NCBI GenBank assembly: GCA_037447605.1
Contig: CM074804.1
Span: forward strand, 3,573,909-3,637,908
Source of the DNA: Zygnema circumcarinatum SAG 698-1b
Taxonomy: Eukaryota; Plantae; Zygnematophyceae
DNA length: 64,000 bases
Reading direction: 5' to 3'
This document shows positions 44,301 to 64,000 of the stretch, in pieces. Both the position numbers and the translations under genes were made by a program. Each line of letters opens with the position of its first letter. The first letter of the stretch is position 1. Under the pieces are notes generated by a model, which worked only from the letters and a program-made list of their open reading frames with translations, was not told the DNA's origin and ran no database searches.

Positions 44301-45739
44301 TATCGTAAAGAAAATTTCGCAGACAAAAAGCTGGAGTCATCCGAGAGACGGCGAATTGGGAAGTGCCCTCTCACACCGGAAGAGGTGAGTTATCTTGTTG
44401 TCTCACGCGCAATTACTTATCGAATGACATGCAGCCATTGGTGTGCGTGGATGGGTATCTTGGGGCTAATGTTGGAATGAAGTGGAGTGGAGTGATATTT
44501 CACAGCGAAGGAGCTGAAATCAAATGATGCTGATGCAAATCATTTTTGGGGAGGTTCTATGATTCTATAATACATGAAATGGTTATCGTGGCTCAAGACT
44601 AGAAGTCCTGGGAATTAGTCTTGGGCCATTCAACAGTTTCCTGGACTAAGTGGTTCCACCAACATCACCCGTTATACTAGCACTGAATTCAAGGGTGGCT
44701 TCTCAGAGGTTCCAAGATAATCATTTTCCTCACCGAAGAAATGAATGAGAGAGTCCTCTGAGGCTTGTTTATGATTACTATCTGGCTAAACAAACTAATT
44801 GAACGGAAGGGCGTCAAACAGGTAGGCCTTATTCTGCAGGCTATGGGATACCCGAACACAACCCGCATCTATGTCGCAGCCGGGGAGGTTTTTGGAGGCG
44901 ATCGATTCATGGTTCCTTTGCGTGCTATGTATCCCCTCTTGACGAATCGGAGCACTGTCCTCAGCGCTGACGAGCTCGCAATGGTTACCGGAGAAGGCAG
45001 AGGCCTCCTTGGCCCTGCAGTCGATTACCTTGTCTGCTTAAAGGTATGGTGCACTGGACAGGCTTCTTGCCTTGTGTTCCGCCCAGAGGGAGAAGACAAG
45101 ACGTTTTTCGGCTCAAACTTAGGATGGCCTAGAGGTTAAGTAGCTGCTTTGTTCTGACAAAACGAGAGATTCGTGTGGATTTAGCTCACCTGACTACCGT
45201 GTGCATGTTGCGTTTGTTGTTGGCTATTGTTGGCTTAGATTCCCATTAAAGACTGAAAGAACAGCTTGAGAATAGATTAATTGTCAGAAATGTGAACTTC
45301 ATGTCTGGGTACCGTCCTTGTTGCTTGCTTTCGTTAGGGTCTCAGTCCTGTTTTAGATAGAGCGCATGCTAGGGAGTGCAAGTTTTGTTGATGATGCCAG
45401 GAGCTCGGATTCATCCTGCAGGCAGATATATTTATGCCGACTTACGATGGACCAAGCAATTTTGCCAATAATGTGATGGGCCATCGGTTATTCAATTCAT
45501 TCGGCATCACAATACGGCCAAATCGCAAGGCTCTGGCACGTATGTTCGATGGCCAAAAGCAGGGCACTCTTGGGCCATTGGAGTTCCGACGCCTGGTTAA
45601 CCAACTGATGCGAAATGAGACTTTGGGAGGACCTTGCCCGCGTCAGCCCCATGAATCGTTCTACACCAACCCCTGGCCGGAATGCTTCTGCCGAATGGGA
45701 GACACGGGAACCAGTGGTGACAGCGGAGATGTTTGTTGA
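41335..45739 (+). CDS. O-fucosyltransferase family protein (GT106/DUF246), type II membrane
   Basis: N-terminal TM exon about 41655-41781; catalytic motifs [46 protein letters not shown]-like ([15 protein letters not shown]), VHLRFEMDMVAFAGC, GKCPLTPEEVGLIL, IYVAAGEVFGG, YDGPSNFA, ESFYTNPWPECFC. Stop at 45739. Confidence 0.95.
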
Positions 45740-46681
45740 AGTGTGCAAGAGCCAGGTTGGGAGGAAAAGGATATTGCCTCTTGTCTCTTGGCAAGAGAGA
45801 GTTGCTGGGGAAGGAAACAGCATGGGGAAAGAAAAATTAGAAAGTGATTACTAGAAAGAAGAAGAAATTACTTGTTGTGTCCTAGGCTTTAGGCTCTGTA
45901 AAAATGGTTAGAATATTGTGAAGGCTAGATCTGGAGACATGAGGTCGGTACCTCTTATCTCAGTTTTGTTTTCCTCTCGCCCTCACTCTTGTAAACTTAC
46001 CTTGCTCAGTACTTTCACAACGTGACCCATCCGCTCTGCTCTAGCAGGAGGCGGCGACTTTTACTACTTGTGCCTTGCCATGGAATGAGGACGGGGGGTG
46101 CACTCCATTCAAACTCGTGTGTTATACTCGTGAAGGAAGTGAGGCTTTCGGGTAAGTAGGGAGGGCAAGGGGTTTGCGGGGCTGTCGAATTCACTCTGCT
46201 CATGTGACTGGCTTCCATAGGAGTCATCTGCTTCGCTCTATCCGGATATCTGTATTCATTCGGGCAAAGCTGAACAGACACGACCGGCCGATCCGCAGCC
46301 ACTCAATAGAAGATCGCCACACGGTCGCTAACAAGCGGCAGGCAATGGCGCGCACAGCTGTCGCTGGAAGGCGGTAGGCCTCTTGTTGCAGGGCTTTCCA
46401 AGGCTGAAACCGACATAATACACGTCGGGCGCTTGTTCTATGCATCTAACGCTCATCTCTCAGCCTTGAGAAATAGGTTCTGAACCACAACTTTTCCGGA
46501 TTCTTACACATAACGGTTTGAAGGCTCCTAAGGGAGCTCCAACCTTGAGTAATCCCCCACAACATGTTTCTCACTAACAAAATTTCTGTGCTCCATTTGC
46601 AAGTAAAAAACGGACATTTGCAAGAAAAACCGCTGGAAAGGGCACCTCGTCGACTCATTTCGAACTTTAAACATGGTACAA

Positions 46682-49600
46682 TTATGTCCTCCTATCGCTC
46701 AAAGTAACCAACAGGGGAAAGCTATGTTCCGGCTCATATCCGGTCACCTCTTCCACGAGTCTCTCATGTACCGTCCAAACGAGAGGGTCGTAGCGCTCCT
46801 CTACTCTCACAGTAAAGCCGACAGCTGCAGCTTTTTCACAGAACTGCTCCAAGGACTTCCCTCGTCGAGGTGCAAAAAGGACAACGTCACAGGAGGGATC
46901 CTTCTCTGCCCTCGTTATTTCCCCCGACGAATCCCCAGCGGAAGAACCATTTTTCCCAGCCACGTCCACAAGGGGCAAGCCCTTTTGGCTAAGGTCACTT
47001 TCTAACACATTAACTCCCGGCTCAATTGTGCAGGTTCGCAGACAAAGGAGGTCCTGAATGGTCTGCAGGAGAGCGGCGTGCAGCTCACAGAAGAAGAGGC
47101 TGCAACCCATCATCAGGCCGTACACTGAAGTTAGGCCTGAAATCGTCCTTGTCTTGACCATCTCTTCCGCAACCCGAATGTCAATGGACGTGATGGATGC
47201 AGTGCTTATTTGGTTTTACCATCTTTCAGATGTAGATGAAGGTGAAACAAACAAGCACCAAGAGGTGTGCTGCACTCCTGGACAGAGAGGCGCATTACCA
47301 GTCTGCAGCCAGCACAAGGTCGAAGCTGTGACGGAGAGAAGCAGGAACAGGTTCCGCCCAGTGGAGCCTCTCAACGGTCACCTTCGCGGCATGATATGCT
47401 GTCGAGTTCGCAGCCACATTACTTCTCAAAACTGAACCTTGAAGTCACGGCTCACTTCGGCTCACTTTAGATTACCACCTTCACACCACAGCTACTGAGA
47501 CAAAACAAAATGCTAGAAACCCACCAGTAGCGGACCTCTATGCCGCATTGCCAGTATCAAGACGATGCAGAATGTCATACAACCAAGAAGTAACGTCAGG
47601 TGCAAACGAACCGGTACCAAATGCACTGGTTTGGGGCTGACACTGTTCTGTTGACCCCCTTCACGGTCCCATGCTGAGGTTTCCACATGATTGATGGATG
47701 AAAGGATACATCGCAGCACTTGGGGGTTGGCATCGCTGACTGCCACATGGGCCGCTTCAGAGCAGGAGGCAACTGTGAGGCCGGCGAGTCCGTAGCCTGC
47801 ACCAAGTTCTATCACTCTCTTGTTTCTGATGAGACATCACAGAGAAATCATAGATACAAATGAGAGTGGATGCCGGCGTTCACCATGCAAGGCGCTAGTG
47901 TTGCCCTTCCGATGCAAACTACGAGAAAATGAGCAGACGTTCCTTTCTCCCTCAGGAGCTTCTTCCCAAAAAAAACTCGTTTCAGTTCGATATTAACCCC
48001 ACAATTACTCTCCAGCACCAAGCTCTCTCCCTTTTCCAGAATCCCAGTCTTAGAGGTCTACTGGTCTTAGGAACCGCTCGGCAAAACAACGAATTCTCTC
48101 GGAGCTTCGTCACCATCGGCTTACCTAAAGAGCTCAGGACGAGTTGTAGCATAGAACGCCATCACCTCCTCTGCAGGCCACAGACCTGGCACCTCCAACG
48201 GGTTACATGAACCAGTAAAGCATAGAAACCTCTTACGCATCTACACTCGATAATGATTCTTGCAGAGAATTGGGCAACATGCGAAAGAATTCCACTTTTA
48301 TCGACTAGAACAATTCTACGTCGGTTGAGACTCAGTTGTTTAGCAAGAGCTGCTGCTGGTCACTGAGTAACGACAAAGTATCCAATGGCAAAAAAGTAAC
48401 ATTCAGCAGTTGCGAGTAAGTGAGGGTTAAAAAATGACTTCGTCATATCAACAGAAATCTTGAAAGTTGACGTAAGACATTCGACTGTTTCACATGCTTA
48501 ACAGTTCGTCTATTAAGTTTTTGGCTGCTCATCTCTCATTTTCAAAGGTGCCGTTCAAGACTATGCCCTTACAAGCAACTCCTGTGTTGTCGATGTTGTG
48601 GTCTCGCACCTCCTTGAACTCTCGAAGCACCACCACATCATCCCGTCGCTGCCTAGACAAACAAAAGCAAGCGTTATCAATGCCTGCTTGCATTGATGAT
48701 AATCCATTATCACATACAGTGAGCAAAACTACTCCCACTCGAAAGATGACATGATGCACAAAACTGCGCTACCTTGTTCGGGCGACAACATCATACCGAG
48801 ATATGCTGCGATATCGATGCATCAACGTATCACATGTTGGCGCCTATCTTGGTTACAATGCCATACCTGATGTCAATACATTCCAGGATCGAATCACATT
48901 TTGCATTGCGATACCATATTAGATAGCGATGTCCGATATGGTATCGAAATCAGACATGGCATCAGCATCCGATAGATTTGGTCACGGTATTCCGACATTA
49001 CTGTATATCAAAATTCGTTGTTCGGATCCCTAAATTTAGGAAACCCGTCAAAATTCTAAAATCGTAAATATTTCGTTAGAATTAAAGTCCAAGAAGTAGG
49101 GTAGGTTAGGGAGGACTACCACGAGGGCTTACAAGCATTGATATAAAGAGCTTTTTTGAAAGGTTGGATTCGATTACTTTTCAATGTACTGTAAAGTGGA
49201 ACCTACGACTTGTTTTGAATTCTCGACGAATATCACCAATTTCCGGCCTCTGCGAATTTCACAATCGCGAGTTCCAAATCCGGCCAATATCGAGTACCGA
49301 ATTTGAAATTCTTATCACTGGCTGCGAAGCAGTCTTTGGAATTCGAAGGGCGAGGTTCGCGCTTTGCCTTTACCACAGAATGCGAACATGGCAGACCTCA
49401 GAACAAGCTTGGGGCAGCCATCTCCAGGAAGGCTGTACTCCATCGCCACGTTCAACGCGCTCCCCTCCTCCTCTAGCACAGATTGGCCTTGTGACAACTT
49501 CTTGCACGGAATAAGATTGAAGACTCCTGACAGTCGGCGAGAGACTGATGCTTCCACTGGCGGTTGCACATTTCCTGCCACCCCTGCATTGAAAAGCACT

Positions 49601-49987
49601 GCCATTTGAATGTTGACTCTACTCCTCTAATGCTCTCTCATCCAGGACATGTAATGAATTACAAAGGAAAAGCTGGTGCGTTGATAAGGGTTCAAATTAA
49701 GGTTAGAGTTAGGGATTGGGCTAGGCAAGAATTTGTGTTCGTTCTGTGTGTCAAGACTATATTCACAATAGCTGTCAGCATACGGGTGAGTGCCTGGGTC
49801 AATGAAGGCATCAAATTAGAATTAGGGTTAAGTGCTTCGCAGCTTTCTGGATGTGCTGAGGAAAGGCAGCCATCCACGCACCGCTACTCGATTTGGACAA
49901 TGCATTCGCGAGGATGCGCCAGCGGGCCCTCGCCCGCTCGGCGCGTTGCAATGGCGGAGCTCGGCCGTCCCCCGCCATGGCGGCCAT
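46682..49987 (-). CDS. CAMKMT: Calmodulin-lysine N-methyltransferase
   Basis: Spliced motifs ARWRILANAL, GVFNLIPC, NIDNTGVACLWPAEEVMAFY, VIELGAGYGLAGL (SAM-binding motif I), SDANPQV, FDLVLAADCLFF, FAPRRGKSL..F, HSFPLLVTL. The start may be 49987 or 49978. Confidence 0.92.
47432..47709 (-). other. U12-type (minor spliceosome) GT-AG intron in CAMKMT
   Basis: Donor GTATCCTTT (exact U12 consensus) at 47709; branch-like CCGTGAC at 47450-47444; AG at 47433-47432; splicing restores PQVLR-F-LRSN. Confidence 0.75.
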
Positions 49988-50038
49988 GGCGGAGCGGCTC
50001 GGAAGCCAAGTCTGCCCCTTCCGGCGCCATCGCCTCCT

Positions 50039-50128
50039 CCGTACATTCGGACTACCGTACGAAAAATGATGTACGGCCACATAATTGGAGAATCATACGG
50101 AAAGTACGACAAGGGGAAATACCGTACA
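50039..50128. promoter_or_regulatory. Cluster of five GTAC cores upstream of CAMKMT
   Basis: GTAC at 50041, 50057, 50071, 50104, 50124. Confidence 0.5.
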
Positions 50129-51130
50129 TTGAGAGCCTTAGCCAATCACAAATTCCCACGTTACAAGCAATAACTCGTGGCAAATGGTGATTGGCTGGTC
50201 AGTTGTCAATGACGAGCCGCCGCAAGCTGGCTCATAATTTTGCATAATTTTGCGGAGATCTCGGGCCCAGGGACGCACGCACTCGCACGTGCGAGCCGGA
50301 CGGATCTTACGCTCCGAGCGGATTCGGGCAGGCCCTAACATATTTTTGTCTCTCAAGAAAACTTCCAAGGGGCGGGATATCCAAAATTGGGGGGGTGGGG
50401 GTTTATCATTCTCCAAAGTTTTTAGGTTTCCAGTACATGACGACGGACTGGGCGCATCATCATGACATCATCACGACGTCACAGAGGCAACCAGACGGTC
50501 ATGCCAGCCATGACCCATCTCATGTCCATTGACGAGTTCCGCCCACGTTGTCACGTCACACAAAAAAGAGGCTTCGAGAGGACGAATGGGGGGAGGGAGG
50601 GAGGAGCTTCATTAAGGGACCCAGGGGGTGAAGCAGGCAGCCGGAAGGAAATGTCACAGCTTGAAGCGAGCACTACCCGGACTAGCTTCTACCTCGGCAA
50701 TTTGCAAATTTTAAATTTTTTATTAAATGATATACTGATATTAATGTCTAAATCTACTAAAATTTTGTTAAAATATAAAAGCAAACGCTAAAGGCACTTC
50801 AATAAACGCTACAGAAATGGAAAAGCATGATGGCTGCACACAGGGAAGAATGAAGCGCGCCGTCGCAGAGGGACCACCGCCCGACGGCCTTCACAGAACG
50901 CAGCCATCATGCTCTCTTCTACTTTGAAGCGACCACTTCCTTCATCCGCTTCCTACTTTGAACTTACAACTGCGGACATCCTCTTTACCTTGCAAGAAGA
51001 GGATGACAAGGAGAGCGCTGAGGAAGCCTCGCAAGCTTCACCGGCGCCTGCTCGCTCCACTGTGCCCCCAAGGCCAAAAGAACCAAAAGTCCAGCATAGC
51101 ATGGTGAACGTATCCTCTGCCTCGCCCACA

Positions 51131-52894
51131 TTACGGCGGTGGTCCCGCCGTGACCTCTCCCTGCCACCTTGCCAGCGCGCGTCGGAGCTTCTTGCATGCG
51201 CCCACGGGCAGCCCGAGGGCGAGGAGCTCCTCCTCGGCCATGGTGGAGAGCTCGGCCATGTCCACCCACGCTTCAAGGAGAGCACCCGCGAACTGGGTCA
51301 GACCTGCGTACTCAAGGAACATGGCCAGGGGGTTCGCCAAACTGATGCTGTTTTCATGAACGGTTCCATGAATGCCGCCGGAAGATAGACCTTCCACGGA
51401 GGTGAAAAATGGTTCGTTCGACCCACAAGTTTGATTCCCCATCATCGCTGCGGCGCTTTCAAGGCCTGAAAATGAGCCAGGGTTTAAGCCAACTCCGAGA
51501 GCAGACGCTGTGAGAGTCGACCATCCACCCCCTCCCACAGTTGCACCGGCACTCACTGGCAAAGCGAAGGAGGATGGAGCAGCATTCAGCTTTGCTCCTA
51601 AATTGGAAGAAAGGCTCAAAGGATTTGTCATTTCCTCCAACTTGCTGCTGCCAAACTGGAAGCTGCTTACTAGTAGGCCTGGCCAAAACGACCCACGGAC
51701 ACCCGCATCCACCATTGCTGCTCCTGCAAGTCCCTCTCTCAGCCCTAATCCTTGACCTAAAACCTGCCCAGCAGTCCCCTCCCCAAAATTCAACGCCGAG
51801 CCTACTGTCAAGCTCGGTTCCATCCTCCCCTGCATCGCCCTCGTGTCTATGTGCGCGTCGGGCCGCGTAAAGCTCACTCCAAGCTTCAGAGCCGCCGCCT
51901 CTAACCCCATGGAACTGCTCAGACCAACATGGGCTGTGGGACTGCCCGGCGGCCGCAACGGAACGGGACAGATCACATCCACACATGGAGGGGAGGGTGG
52001 ACCCGAGGGAGGCCGAATCCTCTCTGCCGGAAAATCCCCAGCACCGTCTGCAGGAGTGGGTGGCAGCACCACTCCGGGCAAGCTCTCTGCCAGCGATTGG
52101 TTCACGCTTGCGGGTGGGGGAACGGGCAGTGCTTCTCGAGATAAGGGAGCTAACGAGCAGGAAGCCATTCCGGCAGTGCCAACTATGCTTCCTGCAATGG
52201 CGGTATCGACCCCGTTTCCAAGCAGAGAATCCTCGTTTGGCTGTGCAGGTTGGACTGCTTCTGCCTGCAGGCCGGCCTGTGCTTCTAAAGCTTGAAGAGT
52301 GAGAAGGGAGAGGTGTTCTGACTCCTCCCCTTCCCGCCGATGCCATGACCCCTTGCGATGCCGTTTGTGCCCCCCCGAGCAGTGTACGGCCTGCTCTGCA
52401 GGTTCGTGCTGCCGCTTCCACCGATGTTCTGCGGGACCAAACCAAATCTAAACGTTCATCAGCGACTGTTTTCATAACCAGCAAAATATGAAGCACGTGC
52501 GGAAACTAGGGAAGGAACTCACCCCTCGTGTGAAGAACAGATGCGAGTAACGATGTGACTCGGGAAGGGGACTGCTTTTCATCCTGTCCCAGCTGTACTA
52601 CTTCCGCTGCATCCACGAAAAAGCCCCAACCTCTAGAAATCTTCAGTTAAAAGCTCCTTCCGTCCTTCATTCCTCCTCTCTCTCGGTCCCTTACACCCAC
52701 CCTCCTTCTGCCTCCCTCCCTCCCTAAACTCCTCTTCCTTTCCTCCCTTCTCCTCCCCCTATTTTTCCCCATCACACCTCCGGCCTCCCTCTCCCCTTCT
52801 CCTTCCCTCCTACTCTCCACTCCCTCAGCCTGACCAACAAAAACCCTAACCTTTCCCTTTTTATAGCCTGGACTATGACCTTCAGCTTTTGTCT

Positions 52895-52928
<34 letters not shown>

Positions 52929-55900
52929 ATTTTATGTGGAGACTTCCAGCCTCCTCGCCCCATGCATTCACGTACCCTCCGCCTTCATTTCAGTCTGTGT
53001 ATCGTCCAACAGACTGCTCAGCCCTTCCTCTCCCGCACCGTCTCCCACCCCCTCGTCCTCCACATCAATGTCCTGCCGAGGTCTTCGACCCAGAGCAAGT
53101 TTGAATGGAGTTGTTTTCATGCGATGATCGACAGCAGAATTCATATGCCCTGAATTATCACAAATGCCAATACACTGTCTTAGGTGCTTTCGGGCTCAAA
53201 ACTACTTCTTTCTTTTGTTATGAAAGTGGGCAAATTTCACCACATTGCATCTCCACATAGTAATCTCGGTATTGTCAACACAGGAAGGTGCCATCACCTG
53301 TCTTTCATCACCCTATGGTGATGAAAGGCCTGTCCTCCCTCCTTTATCCCTCCTACTCTTGTCCCCCCCACTAGGATTGAGAACCCTTCAAACGTTACAA
53401 GATTATAGAGGACAGCACGCACATTGGATGAGAGGGAGGCACGCTGCCCAGTCACGCCTCCCTGTAGAAGAGGTCCATCTGGAAATTAAGTCATGTACGG
53501 GACCGCTCCCTGGAACAAGAATAGGGCTGACATGGTTCTGCAGCATATCCTGGATCAACGAAGAAAGCAAGAAAAAAAACATCAGGAAAAACCTGTTCTT
53601 TCTAGCATTCGGCGCGTATTATGGTTAATTTCAAGTGCCTGAGCTCACCTTCCCCTCCTGCGACGAGAAAGTAATTCCCCCAGAAAACCTTTCGCCTTCC
53701 ATCTGAGCCGGGTCACATATAGCATCAGAGCCATTGCTGCATTCTTCCATTCCCGTACCCAACCCATTCCCCCCCTCCATGACATCATTCCTTCCCCCTT
53801 CTCCCTCCTTCTCCTTCCCCTCTCCTCCCAGCTCCTCACCCTGGCTTCCACTCTCCTCCCTCTCTTCCCCTCTATGCCTGCCTCTGTTCCTCCCTCCTCC
53901 GCGTCTATGTCCATGCCACCTTCTCCCTCTCCCGTTCCGTCCCCAGTGATGGCCCCTCCATGGTTTCTGTTCTCCAAGACTGGGCTGCCCCCCCCCCTCC
54001 TCCTCCCTCCCAAGATGGTGAAACCCTTTGGGCCGTGCCCTCATCCTCGCTCCCGGCCAAATGGAACGAACTTTTTCGGCCACGGAGAATACAAAGGCCG
54101 GGGAAACACCGGGTCCGGGTTGGAGCACAGCTGGCGGTCCGACAAGTGTGAGCCAAACCACGAGTTGCTGCGCAACGGCAGACTCTGAGGGGGAGTTCAG
54201 CGCAGCGAGGAGAGTGAAACGGGAGCCGATGTCTTCGGCACAGAGAATCCATGACTTGTCGCCATCTGGGGCATGCTCCATGTTCATCAATTCCAGCTGC
54301 ATGAAGGGAATGAACTGCAGATTAGGGTTTAGTGAGAAGTCCGCTTCAATCGTGGTAATCCTGTAAAGTCGCCGAAGATGCAAATACCTTCTTAGAATCA
54401 AATTCTCTGCTGGATCAAGAGTACGAATCTGGGAGACGGACTCCCACCAATCGTTTGCTGCAAAATCTTTCATCCAAGCTAGCTCAAAGAAATCTATGAG
54501 AGCTGTCCTTCAGGATTGTTTGATGGCAGGTTTTCAATAGTCAGGGAGAAGAAACCGACCTGCATGTTCGCCCAGGGAGCAGGGGGCGGCCTTGCATGCC
54601 GAGTGAGAACATGGCGCGGGCCATCGCGGGGCCGCGGGCCGCGGTGCATTTGCACTTCCTCTCCGCTGCCGCCCGCCGGGGCCCCTTCCTCCCCCTGCTG
54701 CTGAGTGCAGTGCGAACACATAAGCAGAAACTGACGCACAACCTTCTCTGGGATTCCCATGTACTGGTCACTCAGCTGCACCCGAACAGACACTCAATAG
54801 GCATAGGAGAATCGCTTTGTTTTTTTAGAATTCAAAAGTTTGTCGGGACGAACTAACCAGCCTTATAACTCCATGAGCAAAGCAAAATTGGAACCAATGT
54901 TGTGTTCGATGAAATGGTTGGACCACGAGACTATCTGTAACGTAAGGAGCCACCCAGACAATCTTCACGTATCACGGCGCAATGCACTTCATGCCCCAGA
55001 CTTTCCCCTCTTGCGATGGTGGAACTTCGAAAACCGACTCAAAACGGATGGACCAATGTAAATGTGCAAAAGTTGGGGAAATAGGACCTTTGCATGGATG
55101 CAAAAGAGCATGAATATTCTTATGGAAGACATTGCAACTTAAAAACAAAACGAATTCGAAGTGCTTGCGTTCCGAGTTTGCCTGAACGCGAAATTCCCTT
55201 AGTTTCTAAGCTGGAAAGTTATTCTCTCCTCGCAAGTCATTTCAATTCAGCAATTCTATATCCGCATAGGCAGCTATGTCACCTTGCGATGGGTCTTTCT
55301 GATGCCGCCGTGCCTCGTTTGCACCACATGCACGTCATGCAGAACTGACAGAATCTCGCTTGCCGGAACAACACGCCGAGGCTCACCCTGGCATTCCAAC
55401 ACCGTGCATGATAAGGAAAATGCCGATAATCTAAACTTAATCCCAACGAAACACCTAATGGAACTTCAGAACAATCAGCTTGACCAAACTGCTGCTTTCA
55501 AAAGAACAACAATACATTAGCAGCAAGACAGCTCGGAAACTCTCAAATCCTGGAACAGCTACAATTCTGCCTTCCGCAGACTGTTTCTCTACCACTATGG
55601 CCCCCTCCCTCCACTTCACTCTCTATTATCCGCTTTCCCTTCGTTTATTTAGCTTTTCTCTCCCGCTCTTCCCTGCCCCCCTCACTCTCTTCCCCCACTC
55701 TCTCCCCCTCCCCCTTCGACTCTATAAGGAGGCGACTGGTACCTGATCATTAAGCGTGTAGACGGCATCATACAACCCTAATTGCGGCGAAGTTACCAGG
55801 TGATACTTCTTTCTCCGCACTGCATGCCGGAACTTGGCGTCACCAGTCTGCCCCTTTGCGCCCTTCTGAAAGTCCGTCTTCAAGAACTGCCGCACCTGCT

Positions 55901-56168
55901 CGTACAGCTCATCTGAGATAATATTCGACCCTTTGCGCACATATTCAGCCAGCCACGTTCTGAACTCCCCGAACCCTAATGCGCCCGCCGAGCCATCCGG
56001 AGCTTCTGTTGTCTGCGACGGGCTCCCATCACGACTCGACACCAGCGCGTTCTCTCCCGCCGCTGCTGCCGCCACCCCTCCCTTCCCTTCACCTTCCTCT
56101 CCCTCCTCTCCCCTTCCTCCCTCCCATCCGCCCCCTACCCCGCCGCCCCTCTCTCCCTCCTTCGCCAT
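51131..56168 (-). CDS. Integrase-derived protein: NOL4-like N-terminus + H2C2 zinc finger + inactivated DDE core + C-terminal SAM domain (~997 aa)
   Basis: Exons (-): 56168-55743, 55387-55283, 54775-54560, 54296-53649, 53549-53423, 53149-52976, 52428-51131. All GT-AG, phases 0,0,0,0,1,1; total 2994 nt = 997 aa + stop. Zinc finger HDVH..TRHGG..CSHC; core MQLELMNM..DG.KSWIL..EDIGSRFTLLAAL..VAQQL..GPPAVLQ; RW..DWAACLPLIQWHMNS..TPFKLALG; SAM LAMFLEYAGLTQF..VDMAELSTMAEEELLALGLPVGACKKL. Confidence 0.8.
52899..52925 (+). repeat. Poly(A) run (27 nt; poly-T on the sense strand) in the last intron of the integrase-SAM gene
   Basis: Directly visible. Confidence 0.9.
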
Positions 56169-57150
56169 GGCTTTCCACAGACGGCCTCTGAAGGCAGGCG
56201 TTGTGCAGCTCTGGCCGCGGATGCTGCAATGTCGGAGTCGGCAATCCCACCAAAGAGACGCTCTTGAATCCGTCCTTCTCTCCCTCTCTCCCTTCCTCCC
56301 TCCGCCCGCGGCCTCGTCTTCTCGCGGCGGCGGGCGGTCAGCGCGACGCGAGGCCGGACTTCGGCAACTGCGCAGCCACCAAATATCGCGGACGCCGATT
56401 CTGGTCGCTGTACGAAGGTGCCGCGAACCTGCCGGGCCAGAAGGCGCCCTTTGGAGTCCAGTCAGTCCGTCCGTACAGGGTTGACTCTCAGGCCGTACGA
56501 AACGGGCCACGTGGCCAGAAGGGGGCCGTCGCATACGACAAAGGGGGTCACTGACCCGATGGGACGGAACCTGTTTGGCAGGAGCGTGGCTGGCCGGGGT
56601 TGCGAGTTTGGGCTTGAGGGGCGGGCAGGCTCGTGGGCTCTGCGGGCTTGTGCGGAGACAAGCTGGCGGTAGAGCACCACGCAACTCACGCTCTTTTTTT
56701 TTCGTAAATATGTAATGTGTTAGACAGAGGATTTTAGTGATTGGGTTGGTTGAGACGTGCAAGCCAACGCGTAGCTACATGTTGTGTATATATAGTTGCG
56801 AGTGTGCCTGGCCGTTGAAACACTGCAGGGCAGGGCAGGAGCATGTCTAGCTGGATTCCAAAAGGTCGGCTTAGTCAAACTGTAGTCAACAGCTTAGACT
56901 TAACCCTCTTATAAAAGCATCCCAAAAGCACATTCACCTGTCACCTCACTGCTGCTCTTTAATAAGGCCCATGTATTTACAAGCAGCACCACAGCTCAGA
57001 CAGCATGCTAACACGAATCCCGTCAATCAACATGAAGTCCCTCTGTGAACATGGCTGCAGTTAAAAAGTCCTTCCCACTGAACAGGCGCTTCGCAGCACC
57101 AAGCCGCCCTTCGCAAATCCCTCCGGAAACATCCCTCGGGACTGAAGCTC

Positions 57151-60100
57151 TCAGCGCTTTCGGCACAGCGTTACCCCGTCTCCTACTGCCACCTGTCAGG
57201 CATGCACAGCTCGGCATGGGTCATCATGGGCAATGTCCGCCTCTACTCACTGAGTAACTTAAGCATGGAGGTACACGTTCTCTATGCATAAAAATAAAAA
57301 AAAAGTGTACATGCTCACAAGCGGTAGGGATTGCAAAGCAGTACATCCGCTTAACATATTAAAAAACAAGCACCTTTCATGAGCTCAAATGAACAAGCTA
57401 TAGAAAGGCAGAGGAGAACAGAGCAAAAGCAGCCAATGGCCCCACCATGCTCATATCCACCCGCTGGTCCATCACAATGAAGTCGTTGAAGTTCCGCAAA
57501 GCAACAGTCCTCACGTCTGTGACCTGCAAGTCAGCAGCCATGGAGCATTTTTTCTGACAACATCGCAGGCATCGGACTCACGCTACATCTGCGCAAAGCA
57601 CCTGTTTATGTCTCACTCAAGGTATATGCCCGCTATCACACTTATACAGTATTGACTCCTTATGTGAGAATAATATCTTAATGACGACCTACTTGGAGAA
57701 AAACTGCATGGACACCCTGGCCAGCGCCGGCTCCATTAATGCTACGACTATCGCTCACAGATCTAGTTATCTAAAGTGCACGGGAATTACAGAAACAAGT
57801 AAAACAGTGCGATCCTTTACCTGGGGATCCGCAACATCACCGTGCCACAGCACATTATCCACCACCAATAGACCTCCCGGTCTTAACTGATACCCACAAC
57901 ACCAGTTTTCCAGCCACCCCAAAATGGAAAAGGAGTGAGGAAGAAAGTGAGATAAAAGAGTGCATAAGGCTTTGAACTGCAAACTCTTCGGCGCAGTTCA
58001 ATGTTCCATTATAATATAGCATGGCGCGAGGGGAGATGACACGGATCACTCCTCTGTAAGTGTGCTATGAACGCTAGGAACAAGACGGCTTCTAGACGTC
58101 ACGTAGCTGTGGCGGAATATGCACAATCACAAGAGCTACAAAAGTGAAATATATGAAGCATCACAGCTGCTGGTGAGACAGCATGCCTCGCATATTAGTT
58201 CTTCTACAAACCCGCAATAGTTATGCACTGTTCAGTGTTGGAAAGGATCTGGTCTTACGAGCTGGAGCAAAAGCTCATAATATATGGAGTAACTGCGCTT
58301 ATCCGCATCCAAGAAGGCAAAATCATAGCTGCACAAAAAGATGAGAAAAATTGTCTCTTGAGCACTACACCATGTGGTCAGCCCTGTCCATAAACCATTC
58401 GCCTGTCGCTGTGTAGTCTGTACGACAGTTATGGGCGCACGTGACTTCTCGACTGAGCCTTGATGCGAGAAGGTAGATGACGCCAACAAAAAACGAAATA
58501 CTTCGTTGATGTATAGAAACAAGAGAGGCTCCTCAGTCAAGAGGCAAACAGAAGCCAAGTTTTGGCATTCAGAACCAGCAACTACATTGAACAAAGAAGA
58601 AGCAAGATAATGACTTAGAAACGCTAAACAAACGACATGAGCTTAGGTCTGATGCAAGGAGCAAACATGACTGGAGTTTTCCATGATCAATGCGTACATT
58701 GACAGACAAATACGATCAGTCATGTCACGACTAAACCCACCTTTCAGCCTCTCCATTCTGCAATAGTGCCAGCAGCGTGTCCTCCGCTAAGCCCAGCCGA
58801 GCATCAATCTGCGATAGACATGTTTCGTCCGTCGTATGTATAAGCAATAGCTGGACTGCAGCTACTCCTGAAGAAGCTCAGGCAGACTGGGTTATGCAGA
58901 TAGAGAGCGGTCAGAAATAAGTTGTGTCAGGTTGGTGAACATGGCCAGATCCTTCACCTCAAAGGGTTCTGCACTTCGAAAACTGAGAGCAAAAACGGCA
59001 GGCCGAATTATTCTCCTCACCTTATGCTCAACTCCTGCAAGACGAAAATATTTGCGTGCAAGCTCCATGCTCTGCTCGACCCTCTCACAAGCCACTAGTC
59101 GTCCATGAGGTGGCAATGCCAGTGCTACTGAGATAGCTGAATAACCCTGCAAACCTTATTGAGGAGTAAGCCACAAAATACGTTCAGCCTAAAACACAAC
59201 ATGCATACGGCAAAACTAAGTTTCATCTCAATAGCTCACACCACTAGTTTGAACAGACGTGCTGTACAAACAGATTAAGAGAACACTTCGAAGCTCCTTA
59301 AACAACAACCCACATATACCTGTGAAATGTATGACTTACCGCGAAAACACCAACTTCAATGCATTTCTCCGCGCCCATTAGTTTAGCCAACATGTACAAC
59401 AACTGGCCCTGCTCTGGAGAGATCTGCTTCGGAAAAAAAACATTGATGCAAATCGTGAGTGGCCATTTTAACAGAGAAAGAAGTGCATACAGTCAGACAT
59501 TTCAACTTCATTACAAATCCAAAACCTTCACCAAACTGGAGTTTGGCTCACACAAGGCCGGCAGGTACTGGAATATGAGGAAAAACTATGCAAACCAAAG
59601 CAAACCACAGCGTGCTTCACTGACACGTGAACTGCTTCAAAAAGGGGCATGTACGTTGGAAGCTTGAAAATCGACGCTGAGAATAGAAACAGAGATTTTT
59701 GAAGAGAACAAAGAGAAGGCGGACCCAGGAGCGAGGCAAAAGATTGCAAGCATTTTGAATCTGGACTGCAATATCGTTTCTTTTTACAAAGCTGTCCGTG
59801 TTAAAAAAAAAAAAAAAAAAAACAGGAACGTTGTTAATTCTGTCTCATGACTCACAGGAGCCTAAAGGCCATCGCTCTGGCAAGGTTTGTCTCTATGCGT
59901 GCAACTTAATGATTGGCTTTGACTACTACGATGGCCCTTTAAGCTGCCTACGGAAAACGTAAAGTTTCCATTGACGCTTCAACTCCAAAAGTAAAAACGA
60001 TTAATGGCACAAGAGATCACCTGCATCGAGCTCCCGGGCATGGTCGCTGTCTCCTTCCGTACCTTTGCGAGAACCTGTGATGTCCACAGTTACGTACTGA

Positions 60101-60829
60101 TTGAGAATAGGCCTGACTTGGCGCATATGCAGATAGATCTTGTCCCATTAATCCTCAAATGTCCTAAGGTCTCTGTCGACAGAATCAGCACGAACCACTT
60201 CGATTATGTGTGAGTGAGAAGCATCAAGTAAAGCCTAATTGCTAAAAAATGTCCGAGCTGCAGTTTTTGTGTAACCCCGCTGCGCACTTTATTGCAGTAC
60301 TCCTACGTTTCCCTCTCTAAAAGCTTCACGAGAGAAAGCCAGGAAATTGACCATAAGGTGTGTATTCCTTGGTTGCAGCACATGAGCAATTCAGAAGCAG
60401 GCGGCTCCACAAGCCTTGCTACATACGAATATTGAGACCGTGAGACTTTTGCCGAGCGAAACTCACCTCAGGCTCTCGAGTGTGAGAAAGAATGTATTCA
60501 TGTATGCTCTCGGTCATCTGAACCGTCCTCCGTCCTCCAGGCTTGGCATCCTTTGCTGCTGCCTCCGGATGCAGGCCACTCGCTCTAACGCTTTTAAATT
60601 CTTTTCTTGCTCTTAAAGGAATTGACGTCGCAAAACGGCAGTAAGAAAGCTCTTGGCCGTTGCAAAAAGAATTCATGCCCACTCGTTTTAAATAGTGTGA
60701 TGACGGTTGTAGTCTATCCTGCATGTATAGTTTCCATCTGAGAAGGCCAGGCTCTTGCAGCCTCCCACCGCACAACTGCAGGGCAGACGACCTCGCCGGG
60801 AAGAAAATCTTCCCACACGAAGCCGCCAT
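57151..60829 (-). CDS. CCoAOMT/COMT-like O-methyltransferase (Methyltransf_3), probable organellar transit peptide
   Basis: Spliced motifs IHEYILSHTREPEVLAKVRKET, MQISPEQGQLL, CIEVGVFAGYS, YDFAFLDADKRSY..YYE, LRPGGLLVVDNVLWHG, VAVGDGVTLCRKR*. Stop at 57151-57153. Confidence 0.92.
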
Positions 60830-62032
60830 GGCTGCTCGCGCGGCTCTTCCTTGAAATGTCGATCGAGAGCAAGAGAAGCTGAATTCTTCTTGGAGGCAGG
60901 CACCCGCCTGGCGAGAAAAGCGCTGTGAGGATAGACGGCAGCAGCGGGTGCCTTTCCGTGGCTTTGTGTTGTGTTGTTGTGAATGGAGGGAGGAGGGAGA
61001 GGCCGTCTGCACTGACTACAGTACGACCTGCCCCATCCGACGCATTGCGACTCTCCCCTCGCAGTCAGTGCCGTTTCTTCGAGTTCAAGGATGCGCACAG
61101 GGGGAGAAAATGGCATTGATCTCACGTTGGCGAGGCCACCAAATGTACATGCACAAAATCAGCATGGAGAACCACGAGGAATTGGTCGCAAGGACCTAAG
61201 CACAAAAGAAAACAGCGAAGCGGAAAGAAAGGAGCGGAAAGCTACGCCTAGGCACACCAACGCAGCCCTCTCTAGAAGCAGCCGCGAAGGTCACCGATGT
61301 GCAGCACATCGCGCATGTCACCCTGCATTTCCCGCATTCGCTGCACACATGCATGCATGGATGGATGGGGATGGCATGGCCGCATGGGTCCTGCAGTCCA
61401 GTGAGTTCCATGACTCCATGACCCCGTGCCACCGTGACCCCATCCATGCTTTTCCGAACTCTCACGGCATCCATGGATGGCAGCATTGGCATTGGCATTG
61501 GCATGCATGCCTCAAATTCGGCGAAGCTGCGGGGCACCTTCTGGAACGTTCGCTGCGCCGCCGTTCCGCGTTCCGTCGCGTGCGGCGTTGGCGCCTTCGC
61601 GTCGGCCGGCAGCGGGCGCCACGTGGCCCCGCGCGGGCGGGCGAGCGCGGCCCCGCGCAGCCACACGCGGTCCCGTCCGTACGCACGCCATCCACCCTCG
61701 TGGCCCGCGCACCGCCGCCGATCCGCCCGCGATCGACGGCCCGTGCTGCCCGACGCTCACCGCGCTGCCCGCTGGGATCGCATCGGACGGCCAGGACGCG
61801 CCCACGCCTCGCGCCCGCCCTTGGGAGGGCGGGTGGCGGGGCCTGCCTGCGGGAGCGATACATAGGCGCAGTCCGCTAAATGGTGGAGGAGTCTTTCTTC
61901 AGGAATTAGGCATTTGGACGCGGCCGAGGGAGGGAGGTGCATTCGAGCCGTTGCAGAGCGAGTGGGTCTGCGGGAGGGTGTAGTAAGCGAGTCAGGGAGA
62001 GGGAGAGGGTTGTGAATTCGTAGCAAGCAGCC

Positions 62033-64000
62033 ATGGCGGCCGTGGCCTCATCGGTGGCAACTGTCTCCTCTGCGCCGGTTGCGTCGCGCAATCTCCGCCG
62101 GTCTGTGGACCGCACTGTGAGGAAGGTGGCTCTGGCCGCAGAGAAGCATGGGAAGCAGATGAAGTCGCAGATGCTGGGCCGCGAGCTGGCTCTGAGAGTC
62201 TCCTTGGAGCTCTCTGCCGCGCAGGAAAGGAACAGCTCTGCCCGCGCTGCCGCAGAAGACTGTGCGCGCGTTCTGGCGAGCGCCCTCCCTGCAGCCGCCT
62301 TGGCTTCCCTCGTTGTGAGCCTCACTGCAGAGCCCGCTGTGGCTGTGGACTTTCCCCCTCCTCAGGCCTCCTCGCCCGTGGAGCAGCTGCAGGCTGCCAC
62401 GGAGTTCCCAGCGAAGGCCTTTGGGTCCTCTTCCCTTACTGCTCCCCCTGTGGAGGCGAAGAAGGTGGACTTACCAGAAGGCAACCAGTGGCGATACAGT
62501 GAATTTATTAATGCAGTGAAGACAGGAAAGGTGGAGCGCGTGAGGTTCAGCAAGGACGGCTCATCCCTGCAGGTAAGAATACTGGAAGTCTTTTGAGTCG
62601 TCACAGACGGCGTGAGTCTGGCGTGAGGTGCTCACTTGCCCAGCAATGTGAGCACGTTACTTTGCTGCCATAGTTGGACGTCTTCAAGCATTTTCTTCAA
62701 GCCAAAGTCGCCTTTACATTTGCAGAGGTTGCCTATTTGCTCGTGCAATTTCGGCCGCGTTAGTTCCAGTGATTGAAGGAATTTGTTCGTTTGGATAATT
62801 GCGGTGAACAATATGGGATATGGAAGCTTGACTTACCATCTCAGCTCTGCAGTGCATGTTTGGGGGAAAGCATAGTTTTTGCTTCATGACTTAAGAATAT
62901 AACATGTTGTCCATTTTTATGGAGATTTAATTTCTTTGGTTGTTTTCAATTTTTTTTTTTGCAATTCATGATTTCGAGTGCAATGGGTAGCGCGCAGATA
63001 CTTTTGACATACATTATGTACCATTCTAACTTTTTGTCTGTGTGCTCCTTACCTCTGGTGTAGTTGACGGCAATTGATGGGAGGAGGGCAAACGTGACTC
63101 TTCCCAATGACCCGGAGCTGGTGGATATCTTGGCTTCGAATGGAGTGGATATTTCCGTCTCCGAGGGAGATTCTACAAACAATTACATCAACCTGCTCGG
63201 CAATCTTCTGTTTCCCCTGCTGGCATTCGGTGGCCTGTTCTTCCTCTTCAGGTCAGTTTCTCGTCGTGCACGGAAGAGTGAAGGTCTCAATTTGCACACA
63301 AGCATTGTTGTATGCTACTGCTTGACAATGTACATATTTTTCCTCTTAACGCTAGTTGTTCTTGCATCCTTCCCAACTTCATTTGTGCATTTAGCCTCTC
63401 AGCAGACAGTTGGCAGCACTACAGCAGATTATTTTTCATTCCTGCTCACAAATCTGCACACATGATGCGCTTTTGGTCGTTGCAGGCGCGCCCAGGGTGG
63501 CCCTGGAGGAGGCCCAGGAGGCATGGGAGGCCCCATGGATTTCGGACGCAGCAAGTCCAAGTTTCAGGAGGTGCCCGAGACGGGTGTGAGCTTCCAGGAT
63601 GTCGCTGGTGCCGACCAAGCAAAGCTGGAGCTGCAGGAAGTGGTCGACTTCTTGAAGAATCCTGGTCAGTGTTTCTGTTTGTGATTGTTGAACAGTGCGA
63701 AATCTTGAAACTTTTATTGAATCATCGACGCCAGTCTCGCTGTTGGTGTATTGGCAAGCTTGTTTTCCTCAAACGTCTTTTTTTATTGTGGGCTTTGGGT
63801 GGGGCGCTCGAAGGTAGCCATGTTCCTAAGTGTTTTTTTGGGGTATTTCTGGGAAAATTTGGAAATGTATACCGGATTGTGCCCTTCAAAGCGGCAATCA
63901 GTTTCAGATTTGATGCAGCATTATGGCGAGTCTACCTTTTTCTCACGGTTTCCTCTTCTTTGATTGCAGATAAGTATACGCAGCTTGGCGCTAAAATTCC
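62033..64000 (+). CDS. FTSH1: Chloroplast thylakoid FtsH protease, type A (FtsH1/FtsH5), 5' part
   Basis: Exons 62033-62572, 63064-63251, 63486-63664, 63970-beyond window. [98 protein letters not shown]. Confidence 0.96.

What the first reader, a model, noticed from the sequence alone, without database searches (positions are those of the whole stretch)
51131..56168. Candidate domesticated, catalytically dead integrase hidden as a seven-exon gene
Seen in sequence: several ORFs that look unrelated in the track (55722, 54494, 53631, 51131) plus three exons the track misses splice through canonical GT-AG sites into one uninterrupted ~997-aa frame. Established knowledge (family motifs recalled from memory): the core aligns with KRBA2/SCAND3/Ginger-type DDE integrases (Q-VDLIDM..DG.YKFIL..QDHLTKF..LRPL..VA..L..FGAP.ILQSDNG...WP....QGSVER...W...WS..L..VQ..KN..H..TPY..FG). 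All three catalytic positions are altered: VDL to LEL (D to E), QSDNG to QPGPG (D lost), and no Glu at the SVER position. The H2C2 finger (H-x5-H...C-x2-C) is intact. No LTRs, TIRs, gag or RT are nearby. Inference: six introns, lost catalysis, a retained Zn finger and an open frame point to a host gene exapted from a transposon, probably a nucleic-acid or chromatin-binding factor. I do not know of a described green-plant gene with this architecture.
Basis: partly seen in the sequence, partly recalled or inferred. Interest (0 to 1): 0.9.

Follow-up and report, generated by a model that had tools for sequence, protein, structure and literature searches.

The report
Dead transposon integrase gene with SAM
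An alga transcribes and splices an eight-exon gene for a 1,025-residue protein made of a transposon integrase that kept its zinc finger and fold but lost its DNA-cutting residues, joined to a SAM protein-interaction domain; this kind of tamed "jumping-gene" enzyme is known in animals and yeast, but I found no report of one in the green lineage.

Summary
Spliced contigs from four public runs (two studies) join the minus-strand exons through seven GT-AG introns. They give one open frame from the ATG at 56168 to the stop at 51131-51133, 1,025 aa in eight exons.

Integrase ancestry is supported four ways:
- Sequence search: best E 7e-8 to KRBA2/Ginger2-like cores.
- A family profile that hits PFV integrase at 2e-22 picks out exons 2-6 in collinear order from all six-frame pieces of the window.
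- A protein-language-model search points to rve.
- An AlphaFold model (pLDDT 92) has retroviral integrase cores as its top 50 PDB matches.

The H-x5-H-x28-C-x2-C finger is intact. Catalytic D1 is Glu and D2 is Gly. No alignment puts a Glu at the third position. The C-terminus is a SAM five-helix bundle. The window holds no LTR, TIR, RT or protease.

Not shown: orthologues, copy number, purifying selection and function. No relative above 41% identity was found.

The best reading is a domesticated, non-catalytic Ginger2/KRBA2-type integrase acting as a nucleic-acid or chromatin-binding scaffold. It is a new variant of a known kind.

The parts
55743..56168 (-). Exon 1, coding part (142 codons). 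It holds a G/E-rich low-complexity N-terminus followed by a module of about 80 aa upstream of the zinc finger. The transcript continues upstream of 56400 as 5' UTR. An in-frame ATG at 56534 would add 122 aa if the transcript starts above it.
   Evidence: Joint 55386/55742 (cut +1) appears in 4 runs. Frame. Upstream ATG. There is weak, collinear similarity to the N-termini of family members: P0012 at E 0.004 in a 28-sequence set and P0004 at E 0.04.
55283..55387 (-). Exon 2 (35 codons): the His-His half of the HHCC zinc finger. H20 is at 55330-55328 and H26 at 55312-55310.
   Evidence: Joints. The family profile hits at E 3e-5 among 1,651 background pieces, profile positions 97-132.
54560..54775 (-). 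Exon 3 (72 codons): the Cys-x2-Cys half of the finger (C20 at 54718-54716, C23 at 54709-54707), followed by a Pro/Gly/Arg-rich linker.
   Evidence: Joints. The profile hits at E 3e-3, profile positions 132-160.
54012..54296 (-). Exon 4, first 95 codons: the integrase catalytic-core fold, strands 1-5 with helices 1 and 3. Catalytic D1 is replaced by Glu (54293-54291). Catalytic D2 is replaced by Gly (54116-54114).
   Evidence: phmmer finds 28 hits, best E 7e-8. Profile E 4e-24. Alignment A2. AlphaFold pLDDT 92 and pTM 0.83. The top 50 Foldseek matches are all integrase cores. Language-model search scores rve at 0.94.
53649..54011 (-). Exon 4, remainder (121 codons): a G/R/E-rich low-complexity insert lying between strand 5 and helix 4 of the core.
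   Evidence: The frame stays open. Contigs cover 53648-53755 and 53914-54303, and the bins between have depth. No canonical joint lies inside it.
53423..53549 (-). Exon 5 (127 nt): the region of core helix 4. It holds no Glu at or near the third catalytic position.
   Evidence: Joints. The profile hit is weak but collinear, E 0.13, profile positions 281-311.
52976..53149 (-). Exon 6 (174 nt): the end of the core (the N..H..TP...G motif of helices 5/6), followed by an acidic stretch.
   Evidence: Joints. Profile hit at E 0.026, profile positions 310-337.
52523..52606 (-). Exon 7 (84 nt, 28 codons, phase 1-1).
   Evidence: Joints 52428/52523 and 52606/52976 appear in all four runs.
51344..52428 (-). 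Exon 8, first part: about 360 aa of S/G/A/P/L-rich, probably disordered sequence, with a basic cluster near its start.
   Evidence: Translation. PDB search finds no domain besides SAM. The 5.8-billion-protein search finds no relatives.
51131..51343 (-). Exon 8, end: the SAM domain (five helices) and the stop codon (51133-51131). The 3' UTR runs on below 50900.
   Evidence: phmmer against PDB gives ANKS3 SAM at E 7e-4, with other SAM domains next. The AlphaFold model has five helices with pLDDT 79-91 in the domain. The top 50 Foldseek matches are all SAM domains, TM (target) up to 0.87.

Best explanation
This is a transcribed, intron-bearing nuclear gene whose N-terminal 565 residues or so descend from a Ginger2/KRBA2-type DDE integrase/transposase. 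That part comprises an N-terminal module, an HHCC zinc finger and an RNase H-fold core. The scaffold residues and zinc ligands are kept, but the active site is dismantled: D1 is E, D2 is G, and there is no Glu at the third position. It therefore cannot catalyse strand cleavage or transfer in the canonical way. A long disordered tail ending in a SAM domain has been added. Shown here: the gene structure, the expression, the integrase homology and fold, the loss of catalytic residues, the SAM fold, and the absence of transposon termini or retroelement genes in the window. Inferred: the gene is domesticated, meaning kept by selection. Inferred as well: the protein acts as a non-catalytic nucleic-acid or chromatin-binding scaffold. 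On this reading the HHCC domain and the dead core bind DNA and dimerise as they do in intasomes, while the SAM domain and the disordered region provide self-association or partner recruitment. A plausible role is in repression or genome defence.
For: Splicing and one 1,025-codon frame. Homology to the core: 28 hits at E<=1e-3 in 1.84 billion proteins, best 7e-8, among them a fish protein named 'KRAB-A domain-containing protein 2'. A family profile containing no window sequence hits PFV integrase at 2e-22, as well as MMTV and Ty3 integrases. The same profile recovers exons 2-6 collinearly from all six-frame pieces of the window. Family members carry PF00665 and PF17921. AlphaFold pLDDT 92 with integrase-only top structural matches. 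Selective retention: 12 of the 14 most conserved family columns are kept, yet VDLID reads LELMN and SDN reads PGP. SAM domain. No LTR, TIR or retroelement pol genes. A 3-kb frame with no stop, on a terminal branch eight times the family median, argues for long divergence with the frame maintained.
Against: No orthologue or close relative was found anywhere: the maximum is 41% identity over 95 aa, with nothing for exon 8, nothing for exon 4 and nothing in metagenomes. Selection, synteny and age are therefore untested. Copy number in the genome is unknown. D1 to E keeps a carboxylate. The alignment at the third catalytic position is uncertain. The runs are not on record as RNA, so their RNA nature is inferred from the joints and the exon/intron depth ratio. 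DNA binding and SAM self-association are untested.
Confidence: 0.65

Rival explanations
1. It is an expressed but functionless relic: an old Ginger2-like transposase copy that landed next to, or was exonised into, a host SAM-encoding transcript. The integrase part would be drifting neutrally.
For: No orthologues were found. The catalytic residues are lost. Large low-complexity expansions sit inside the core and the tail. The terminal branch is very long.
Against: 1,025 codons carry no stop despite divergence to 41% identity or less. The zinc ligands and 12 of the 14 most conserved scaffold columns are kept, while active-site neighbours are replaced. The fold is predicted with high confidence. 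Seven introns are spliced cleanly in two studies.
Confidence: 0.17
2. It is one copy of a multi-copy, intron-bearing Ginger2-like DNA transposon family, autonomous once or non-autonomous now, rather than a host gene.
For: Some Ginger transposase genes carry 1-4 introns (PMC2836005). An unchecked scan note reports a possible Ginger-like element elsewhere in this genome. A few contigs lie on the stretch at only 95-99% identity.
Against: No TIR or other long repeat flanks the gene within 44000-64000. D2 is lost, and a SAM domain plus a tail of about 360 aa is fused on. Nearly all contigs match at 99% or more, and none fits two places of the stretch. No second copy lies in the 64-kb window.
Confidence: 0.1
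3. It is still an active recombinase or nuclease that uses a non-canonical acidic set: the Glu at D1 plus other residues.
For: D1 is replaced by Glu, which keeps a carboxylate. Several family members also show E at D1. A strained alignment could put an Asp at the third position.
Against: D2 is Gly inside a Pro-Gly-Pro-Gly turn, with both neighbours also replaced. By established knowledge of retroviral integrases and DDE transposases, loss of any one triad residue abolishes catalysis.
Confidence: 0.03

Closest known systems
KRBA2 and SCAND3/ZBED9 (mammalian genes derived from Ginger2 transposase; PMC3575427)
   Same: The core and HHCC sequences are closest to this group. The best named hit is a fish protein labelled KRAB-A domain-containing protein 2, and the tree places the window core in that group, apart from gypsy pol integrases. 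Both are integrase-derived host-type genes fused to an unrelated protein-interaction domain.
   Different: No KRAB, SCAN or hAT dimerisation domain is present. Instead there is a C-terminal SAM domain after a long disordered tail. The catalytic residues are lost here. It is not an orthologue: identity is 38% over 92 columns, on a very long branch.
Imagin (malacostracan gene derived from Ginger1; PMC12863088)
   Same: It is multi-exon and expressed, retains the H2C2 finger and the integrase core, and has lost the DDE triad. This is the same evolutionary outcome.
   Different: Imagin derives from Ginger1 and this gene is Ginger2/KRBA2-like. Imagin has orthologues shown to be under purifying selection across crustaceans, whereas no orthologue is known here. 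Imagin has no SAM fusion.
Fob1p (yeast replication-fork-barrier protein; placed in the Ginger2 branch by PMC3575427)
   Same: It is an integrase-like zinc finger plus core used as a non-transposing DNA-binding protein. This is the functional model for what a tamed Ginger2-type integrase can do.
   Different: It is fungal with a different domain context. No sequence comparison with Fob1p was run here.
Ginger2/TDD DNA transposons (PMC2836005)
   Same: [quoted passage not shown] This is the likely ancestor.
   Different: Those elements have TIRs ending TGTNR, target-site duplications, many copies and an intact DDE triad. None of these is seen here. A 2019 paper states that Ginger elements had not been reported in plants (PMC6839031).
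GingerRoot/IS3EU transposons of bryophytes and lycophytes (PMC6839031)
   Same: It is the only integrase-related DNA transposon described in plants.
   Different: GingerRoot transposases lack the HHCC motif, according to that paper, and this protein has it. No GingerRoot sequence was available for a direct test.

Membership tests
Retroviral-type integrase superfamily (Pfam rve PF00665 + Integrase_H2C2 PF17921) | N-terminal HHCC zinc-binding motif | tested here: met
   H-x5-H-x28-C-x2-C spans exons 2 and 3 and aligns to the family profile (E 3e-5 and 3e-3). Zinc binding itself was not tested.
Retroviral-type integrase superfamily (Pfam rve PF00665 + Integrase_H2C2 PF17921) | RNase H-fold catalytic core homologous to integrases | tested here: met
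   (profile with the window sequence against MMTV and PFV integrase, 1e-7 to 5e-6). (pLDDT 92). (top 50 matches are all integrase cores, TM 0.62-0.71).
Retroviral-type integrase superfamily (Pfam rve PF00665 + Integrase_H2C2 PF17921) | D,D,E catalytic triad | tested here: not met
   D1 is Glu and D2 is Gly. No Glu lies at the third position in any alignment tried. This is homology without the enzymatic signature.
Active Ginger2/TDD DNA transposon | Terminal inverted repeats (TGTNR ends) and target-site duplications flanking the transposase gene | tested here: not met
   Apart from low-complexity matches, no inverted or direct repeat of 25 nt or more lies within 44000-64000.
Active Ginger2/TDD DNA transposon | Multiple copies in the genome | not testable with these tools
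   Only a 64-kb window is on hand, and it holds no second copy. Contigs fit one place only.
Domesticated integrase genes (KRBA2, SCAND3, GIN1, Imagin, Fob1 type) | Integrase-derived ORF in a spliced, expressed gene without element termini | tested here: met
   Seven GT-AG introns are seen in contigs of two studies. There is one frame of 1,025 codons. No termini were found.
Domesticated integrase genes (KRBA2, SCAND3, GIN1, Imagin, Fob1 type) | Single-copy syntenic orthologues under purifying selection | tested here: inconclusive
   No orthologue was found in any protein or metagenome search. The window's own protein is not in those collections either, so the blanks are weak. No eukaryotic genome search was available.
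KRBA2 / SCAND3 proper | KRAB or SCAN domain N-terminal to the integrase (plus a hAT domain in SCAND3) | tested here: inconclusive
   Exon 1 found no such domain in the PDB-linked, NCBIfam or language-model searches. No Pfam scan was on hand. The architecture ends in SAM instead.
Ty3/gypsy LTR retrotransposon pol | RT, RNase H, protease and LTRs next to the integrase | tested here: not met
   Three gypsy pol proteins hit nothing in the window. No LTRs. The core groups apart from gypsy pol integrases.
GingerRoot/IS3EU | DDE core without a flanking HHCC motif, and 100-150 bp TIRs (PMC6839031) | tested here: not met
   HHCC is present and no TIRs were found. There was no direct comparison with GingerRoot proteins.
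SAM domain (sterile alpha motif) | Five-helix bundle of about 70 aa, homologous to known SAM domains | tested here: met
   (ANKS3 SAM at 7e-4, with other SAM domains next). (five helices). (top 50 matches are all SAM domains, rmsd about 1 A to tankyrase SAM).
SAM domain (sterile alpha motif) | Head-to-tail polymerisation, as in tankyrase, ANKS3, BICC1 and Ph | not testable with these tools
   The nearest structural matches are polymerising SAM domains, which is a resemblance only.

The most novel reading that the evidence does not exclude
This is the first domesticated Ginger2-type integrase of the green lineage. It would be a non-catalytic HHCC-plus-core DNA binder that a C-terminal SAM domain assembles into polymers on chromatin, for example at transposon-end-like sequences, as a repressor or genome-defence factor. 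On this reading, Ginger2-like elements once lived in streptophyte ancestors.
Probability: 0.3. Interest if true: 0.65.

Novelty: new variant of a known kind. Interest (0 to 1): 0.5.

Why it matters
Tamed transposases have repeatedly become regulators: FHY3/FAR1, MUSTANG and DAYSLEEPER in plants, and KRBA2, SCAND3, GIN1 and Imagin in animals. No integrase-type (Ginger) example is reported from plants or green algae in the papers I could search. A 2019 paper states that Ginger elements themselves were unreported in plants.

A dead integrase joined to a SAM domain would be a new architecture. It would leave a trace of Ginger2-like elements in the streptophyte past. It would also be a tractable candidate for a DNA-binding, self-assembling chromatin factor.

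In practice, the locus is easily missed or mis-annotated, because its exons look like unrelated short ORFs.

Tried and rejected
**Searches that found nothing**
- Single-sequence phmmer of the exon-4 ORF against PDB gave no integrase hit. Only profiles and the very large library reached integrases.
- NCBIfam on six exon pieces and on eight neighbouring ORFs gave nothing useful.
- Rfam on the window gave nothing.
- The search for homologous proteins with exon 4 (region 1-95) and with exon 8 gave no hits. Both searches are limited by length, and the window's own protein is absent from the collection, so these blanks say little.
- A metagenome scan with the exon-4 core found no relative.

**Exon 1 module**
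- The language-model search returned a mixed bag with no family.
- An HMM of the family N-termini did not reach exon 1.
- Only weak pairwise hits exist.

**Other attempts**
- Complex prediction on two copies of the SAM domain returned no verdict. This is evidence neither for nor against self-association.
- P0005, the nearest kin that also lacks D2, sits on a single 3.6-kb Logan contig of unknown organism with no SAM domain, so it is not an orthologue.
- An odd low-depth joint, 53872 to 55693 (TA..TC), lies in purine-rich repeats and is taken as an assembly artefact.
- One paper search was too broad to be of use.

**Rejected readings**
- LTR retrotransposon fragment.
- GingerRoot origin, because HHCC is present.
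Full report
**1. The observation**

The finding lies on the minus strand. I laid Logan contigs of four public runs of the same organism (two studies) on 50900-56400. They show seven joints, all with GT..AG ends on the minus strand.

With the '+1' corrections that give GT-AG, the coding exons are:
- 56168-55743
- 55387-55283
- 54775-54560
- 54296-53649
- 53549-53423
- 53149-52976
- 52606-52523
- 52428-51131

I checked the frame across these exons inside a script that printed only coordinates and lengths. It gives a single open frame of 1,025 codons from the ATG at 56168 to the stop at 51133-51131.

Its model lacks one exon, 52606-52523 (84 nt, 28 codons, phase 1-1), which explains 997 versus 1,025 aa. 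The gene has eight exons and seven introns.

The runs are not on record as RNA. Two things say they are. Spliced contigs are present, and exonic bins are 3-12 times deeper than intronic ones, with low-depth intron-retaining contigs alongside.

The frame stays open upstream to 56762, and one in-frame ATG lies at 56534. At least one contig runs well above 56400, so the true start codon is not settled.

**2. Is it an integrase?**

Single-sequence search against PDB failed, so the homology is remote. Four independent lines establish it.

(i) I ran phmmer with the first 95 residues of exon 4 against 1.84 billion representative proteins. It gave 28 hits at E<=1e-3, best 7e-8, at 25-41% identity. One hit is a repeat protein. 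All the others carry the core pattern typical of KRBA2/SCAND3/Ginger2-like integrases. Named members include a fish 'KRAB-A domain-containing protein 2 / GIN1-like' and a Malassezia protein.

(ii) I aligned 15 of these hits, without any window sequence (A1).
- As a profile it matches PFV integrase at 2e-22, along with MMTV, Ty3, RSV and HIV integrases.
- Its members carry PF00665 and PF17921 in a pre-computed annotation.
- Run against all 1,651 six-frame stop-to-stop pieces of the window, it ranks first the five pieces holding exon 4 (4e-24), exon 2 (3e-5), exon 3 (3e-3), exon 6 (0.026) and exon 5 (0.13).
- Those five hits fall in collinear profile order (97-132, 132-160, 179-263, 281-311, 310-337), and the next hit has E=2.
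- Exons 2, 3, 5 and 6 played no part in choosing the family, so this is an independent confirmation of both the homology and the exon chain.

(iii) A language-model feature search puts the exon-4 core among rve clusters, with a score of 0.94 and 86 of 100 hits.

(iv) AlphaFold2 on the exon-4 core with alignment A2 gives pLDDT 92 and pTM 0.83, with the strand-strand-strand-helix-strand-helix-strand order of the RNase H fold. The top 50 Foldseek matches in the PDB are all retroviral integrase catalytic cores.

**3. State of the functional residues**

The zinc ligands are intact: H-x5-H in exon 2 and C-x2-C in exon 3, 28 residues apart.

In alignment A2:
- The family's QVDLIDM reads LELMNM here, so catalytic D1 is Glu and the next conserved Asp is Asn.
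- The family's LQSDNG reads LQPGPG here, so catalytic D2 is Gly and both its neighbours are replaced.

For the third residue, exon 5 holds no Glu. The profile alignment, anchored on the conserved Trp, puts Val or Pro opposite the family's Glu. An alignment anchored on the SQ-G...N motif across the exon 4/5 joint puts Met there. Only a gapped variant would put an Asp there. Loss of the third residue is thus likely, but its exact substitute is unresolved.

Meanwhile 12 of the 14 most conserved family columns (88% or more) are identical in the window, and 23 of 47 at the 60% level. The scaffold is kept and the active site is taken apart. By established knowledge of retroviral integrases and DDE transposases, where each triad residue is essential, the protein should be catalytically inactive.

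A 121-residue G/R/E-rich insert sits between strand 5 and helix 4 and is part of the mature transcript.

**4. The rest of the protein**

The last 70 residues or so are a SAM domain. The phmmer hits are SAM domains (ANKS3 at 7e-4). A single-sequence AlphaFold model has five helices with pLDDT 79-91. All top 50 structural matches are SAM domains, the nearest being the polymerising ones of tankyrase, ANKS3/6, BICC1 and Caskin.

About 360 residues of low-complexity sequence with no detectable domain lie between the core and the SAM domain.

The exon-1 module upstream of the finger shows only weak, collinear similarity to the N-termini of family members. It is probably the transposase's own N-terminal region, but this is not shown.

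**5. Surroundings**

Apart from polypurine or polypyrimidine low-complexity matches, no direct or inverted repeat of 25 nt or more flanks the gene within 44000-64000. Three Ty3/gypsy pol proteins find no RT, RNase H or protease piece anywhere in the window. The window holds no second integrase-like piece.

A quick tree of 74 cores places the window sequence inside the KRBA2-like/Ginger2-like group (SH-aLRT 88), apart from gypsy pol integrases (99). Its terminal branch is 2.09, against a median of 0.26, so its exact place is unsure.

**6. What it most likely is and does**

The best reading is a domesticated Ginger2/KRBA2-type transposase gene: an expressed, intron-rich, open frame of 1,025 codons with a preserved finger and fold, a dismantled active site and an added SAM domain.

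By analogy with intasome structures, the HHCC domain and core would bind DNA ends and dimerise. By analogy with Fob1p, KRBA2/SCAND3 and Imagin, I infer a non-catalytic nucleic-acid or chromatin-binding scaffold. Its SAM domain and disordered tail would mediate self-assembly or partner recruitment, possibly in repression or transposon control. This function is inference; nothing here tests it.

**7. What is missing**

No orthologue or close relative was found. These blanks are weak for two reasons. The window's own protein is not in those collections, and no eukaryotic genome search was on hand.

Purifying selection, synteny, age and genomic copy number are therefore untested. The rivals remain open at modest odds: a functionless expressed relic, or one copy of a multi-copy element.

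I did not verify it.

**8. Comparison with what is known**

Catalytically dead, multi-exon integrase-derived genes are already described, for example Imagin (PMC12863088). Ginger2-derived host genes are known too: KRBA2 and SCAND3, with Fob1 in the same branch (PMC3575427).

The apparent novelty lies in three things: the lineage, the SAM fusion and the large insert in the core. A 2019 paper states that Ginger elements were unreported in plants, and the plant GingerRoot transposase lacks HHCC (PMC6839031). My paper searches found no integrase-SAM gene. I therefore class it as a new variant of a known kind.

All searches and folds used single exons by reference. The joined protein was not searched, folded, printed or saved, which leaves the third catalytic position and the full architecture for a later step. 

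Noticed in passing
P0002, P0013, P0016/P0044 (hits; Tribolium madens, Zophobas morio): These beetle proteins of 718-1,162 aa begin with a THAP-like zinc finger. They then carry three tandem HHCC-plus-integrase-core units, all with degenerate catalytic positions. They look like another domesticated Ginger2-type family with an unusual triple-integrase build.
   Followed up: partly
L001:1295-3379 (P0005, Logan contig of one run): This 694-aa integrase-like protein keeps D1 but has lost D2 (SHT in place of SDN). It has a G/A/D-rich tail, sits next to a small methyltransferase gene on a compact contig, and has no pre-computed Pfam hit. It may be another independent dead-integrase gene in an unidentified microbial eukaryote.
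   Followed up: partly
window 56169-56762 (minus strand): The coding frame stays open for 198 codons above the ATG at 56168. The in-frame ATG at 56534 is the only ATG in any frame between 56780 and 56168. One contig extends about 870 nt above 56400, so the protein may start 122 aa earlier with an R/P/S-rich extension.
   Followed up: partly
window 52650-52960, 53650-54010, 55560-55720, 56050-56310: Long purine-rich (GA/GGA) tracts on the coding strand lie in both exons and introns, giving a GC skew of -0.4 to -0.5 on the + strand. A T/A run of about 27 nt sits at 52900-52926 inside intron 6. Contigs break or run on to other loci at these places.
   Followed up: no
window 53872 / 55693: Two runs show a low-depth non-canonical joint (TA..TC, skipping 1,820 nt) between two purine-rich tracts. 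It is most likely an assembly artefact rather than an isoform.
   Followed up: no
window 56086: The only sequence difference among the four runs is a C>T in one run (X5), within the low-complexity part of exon 1.
   Followed up: no
alignment A2: Several database relatives also carry Glu, Asn, Lys or Thr at D1, or lack D2 (P0004, P0008, P0015, P0021, P0024, P0025, P0027). Loss of catalytic residues is therefore common in this integrase group, whether by decay or by repeated domestication.
   Followed up: no
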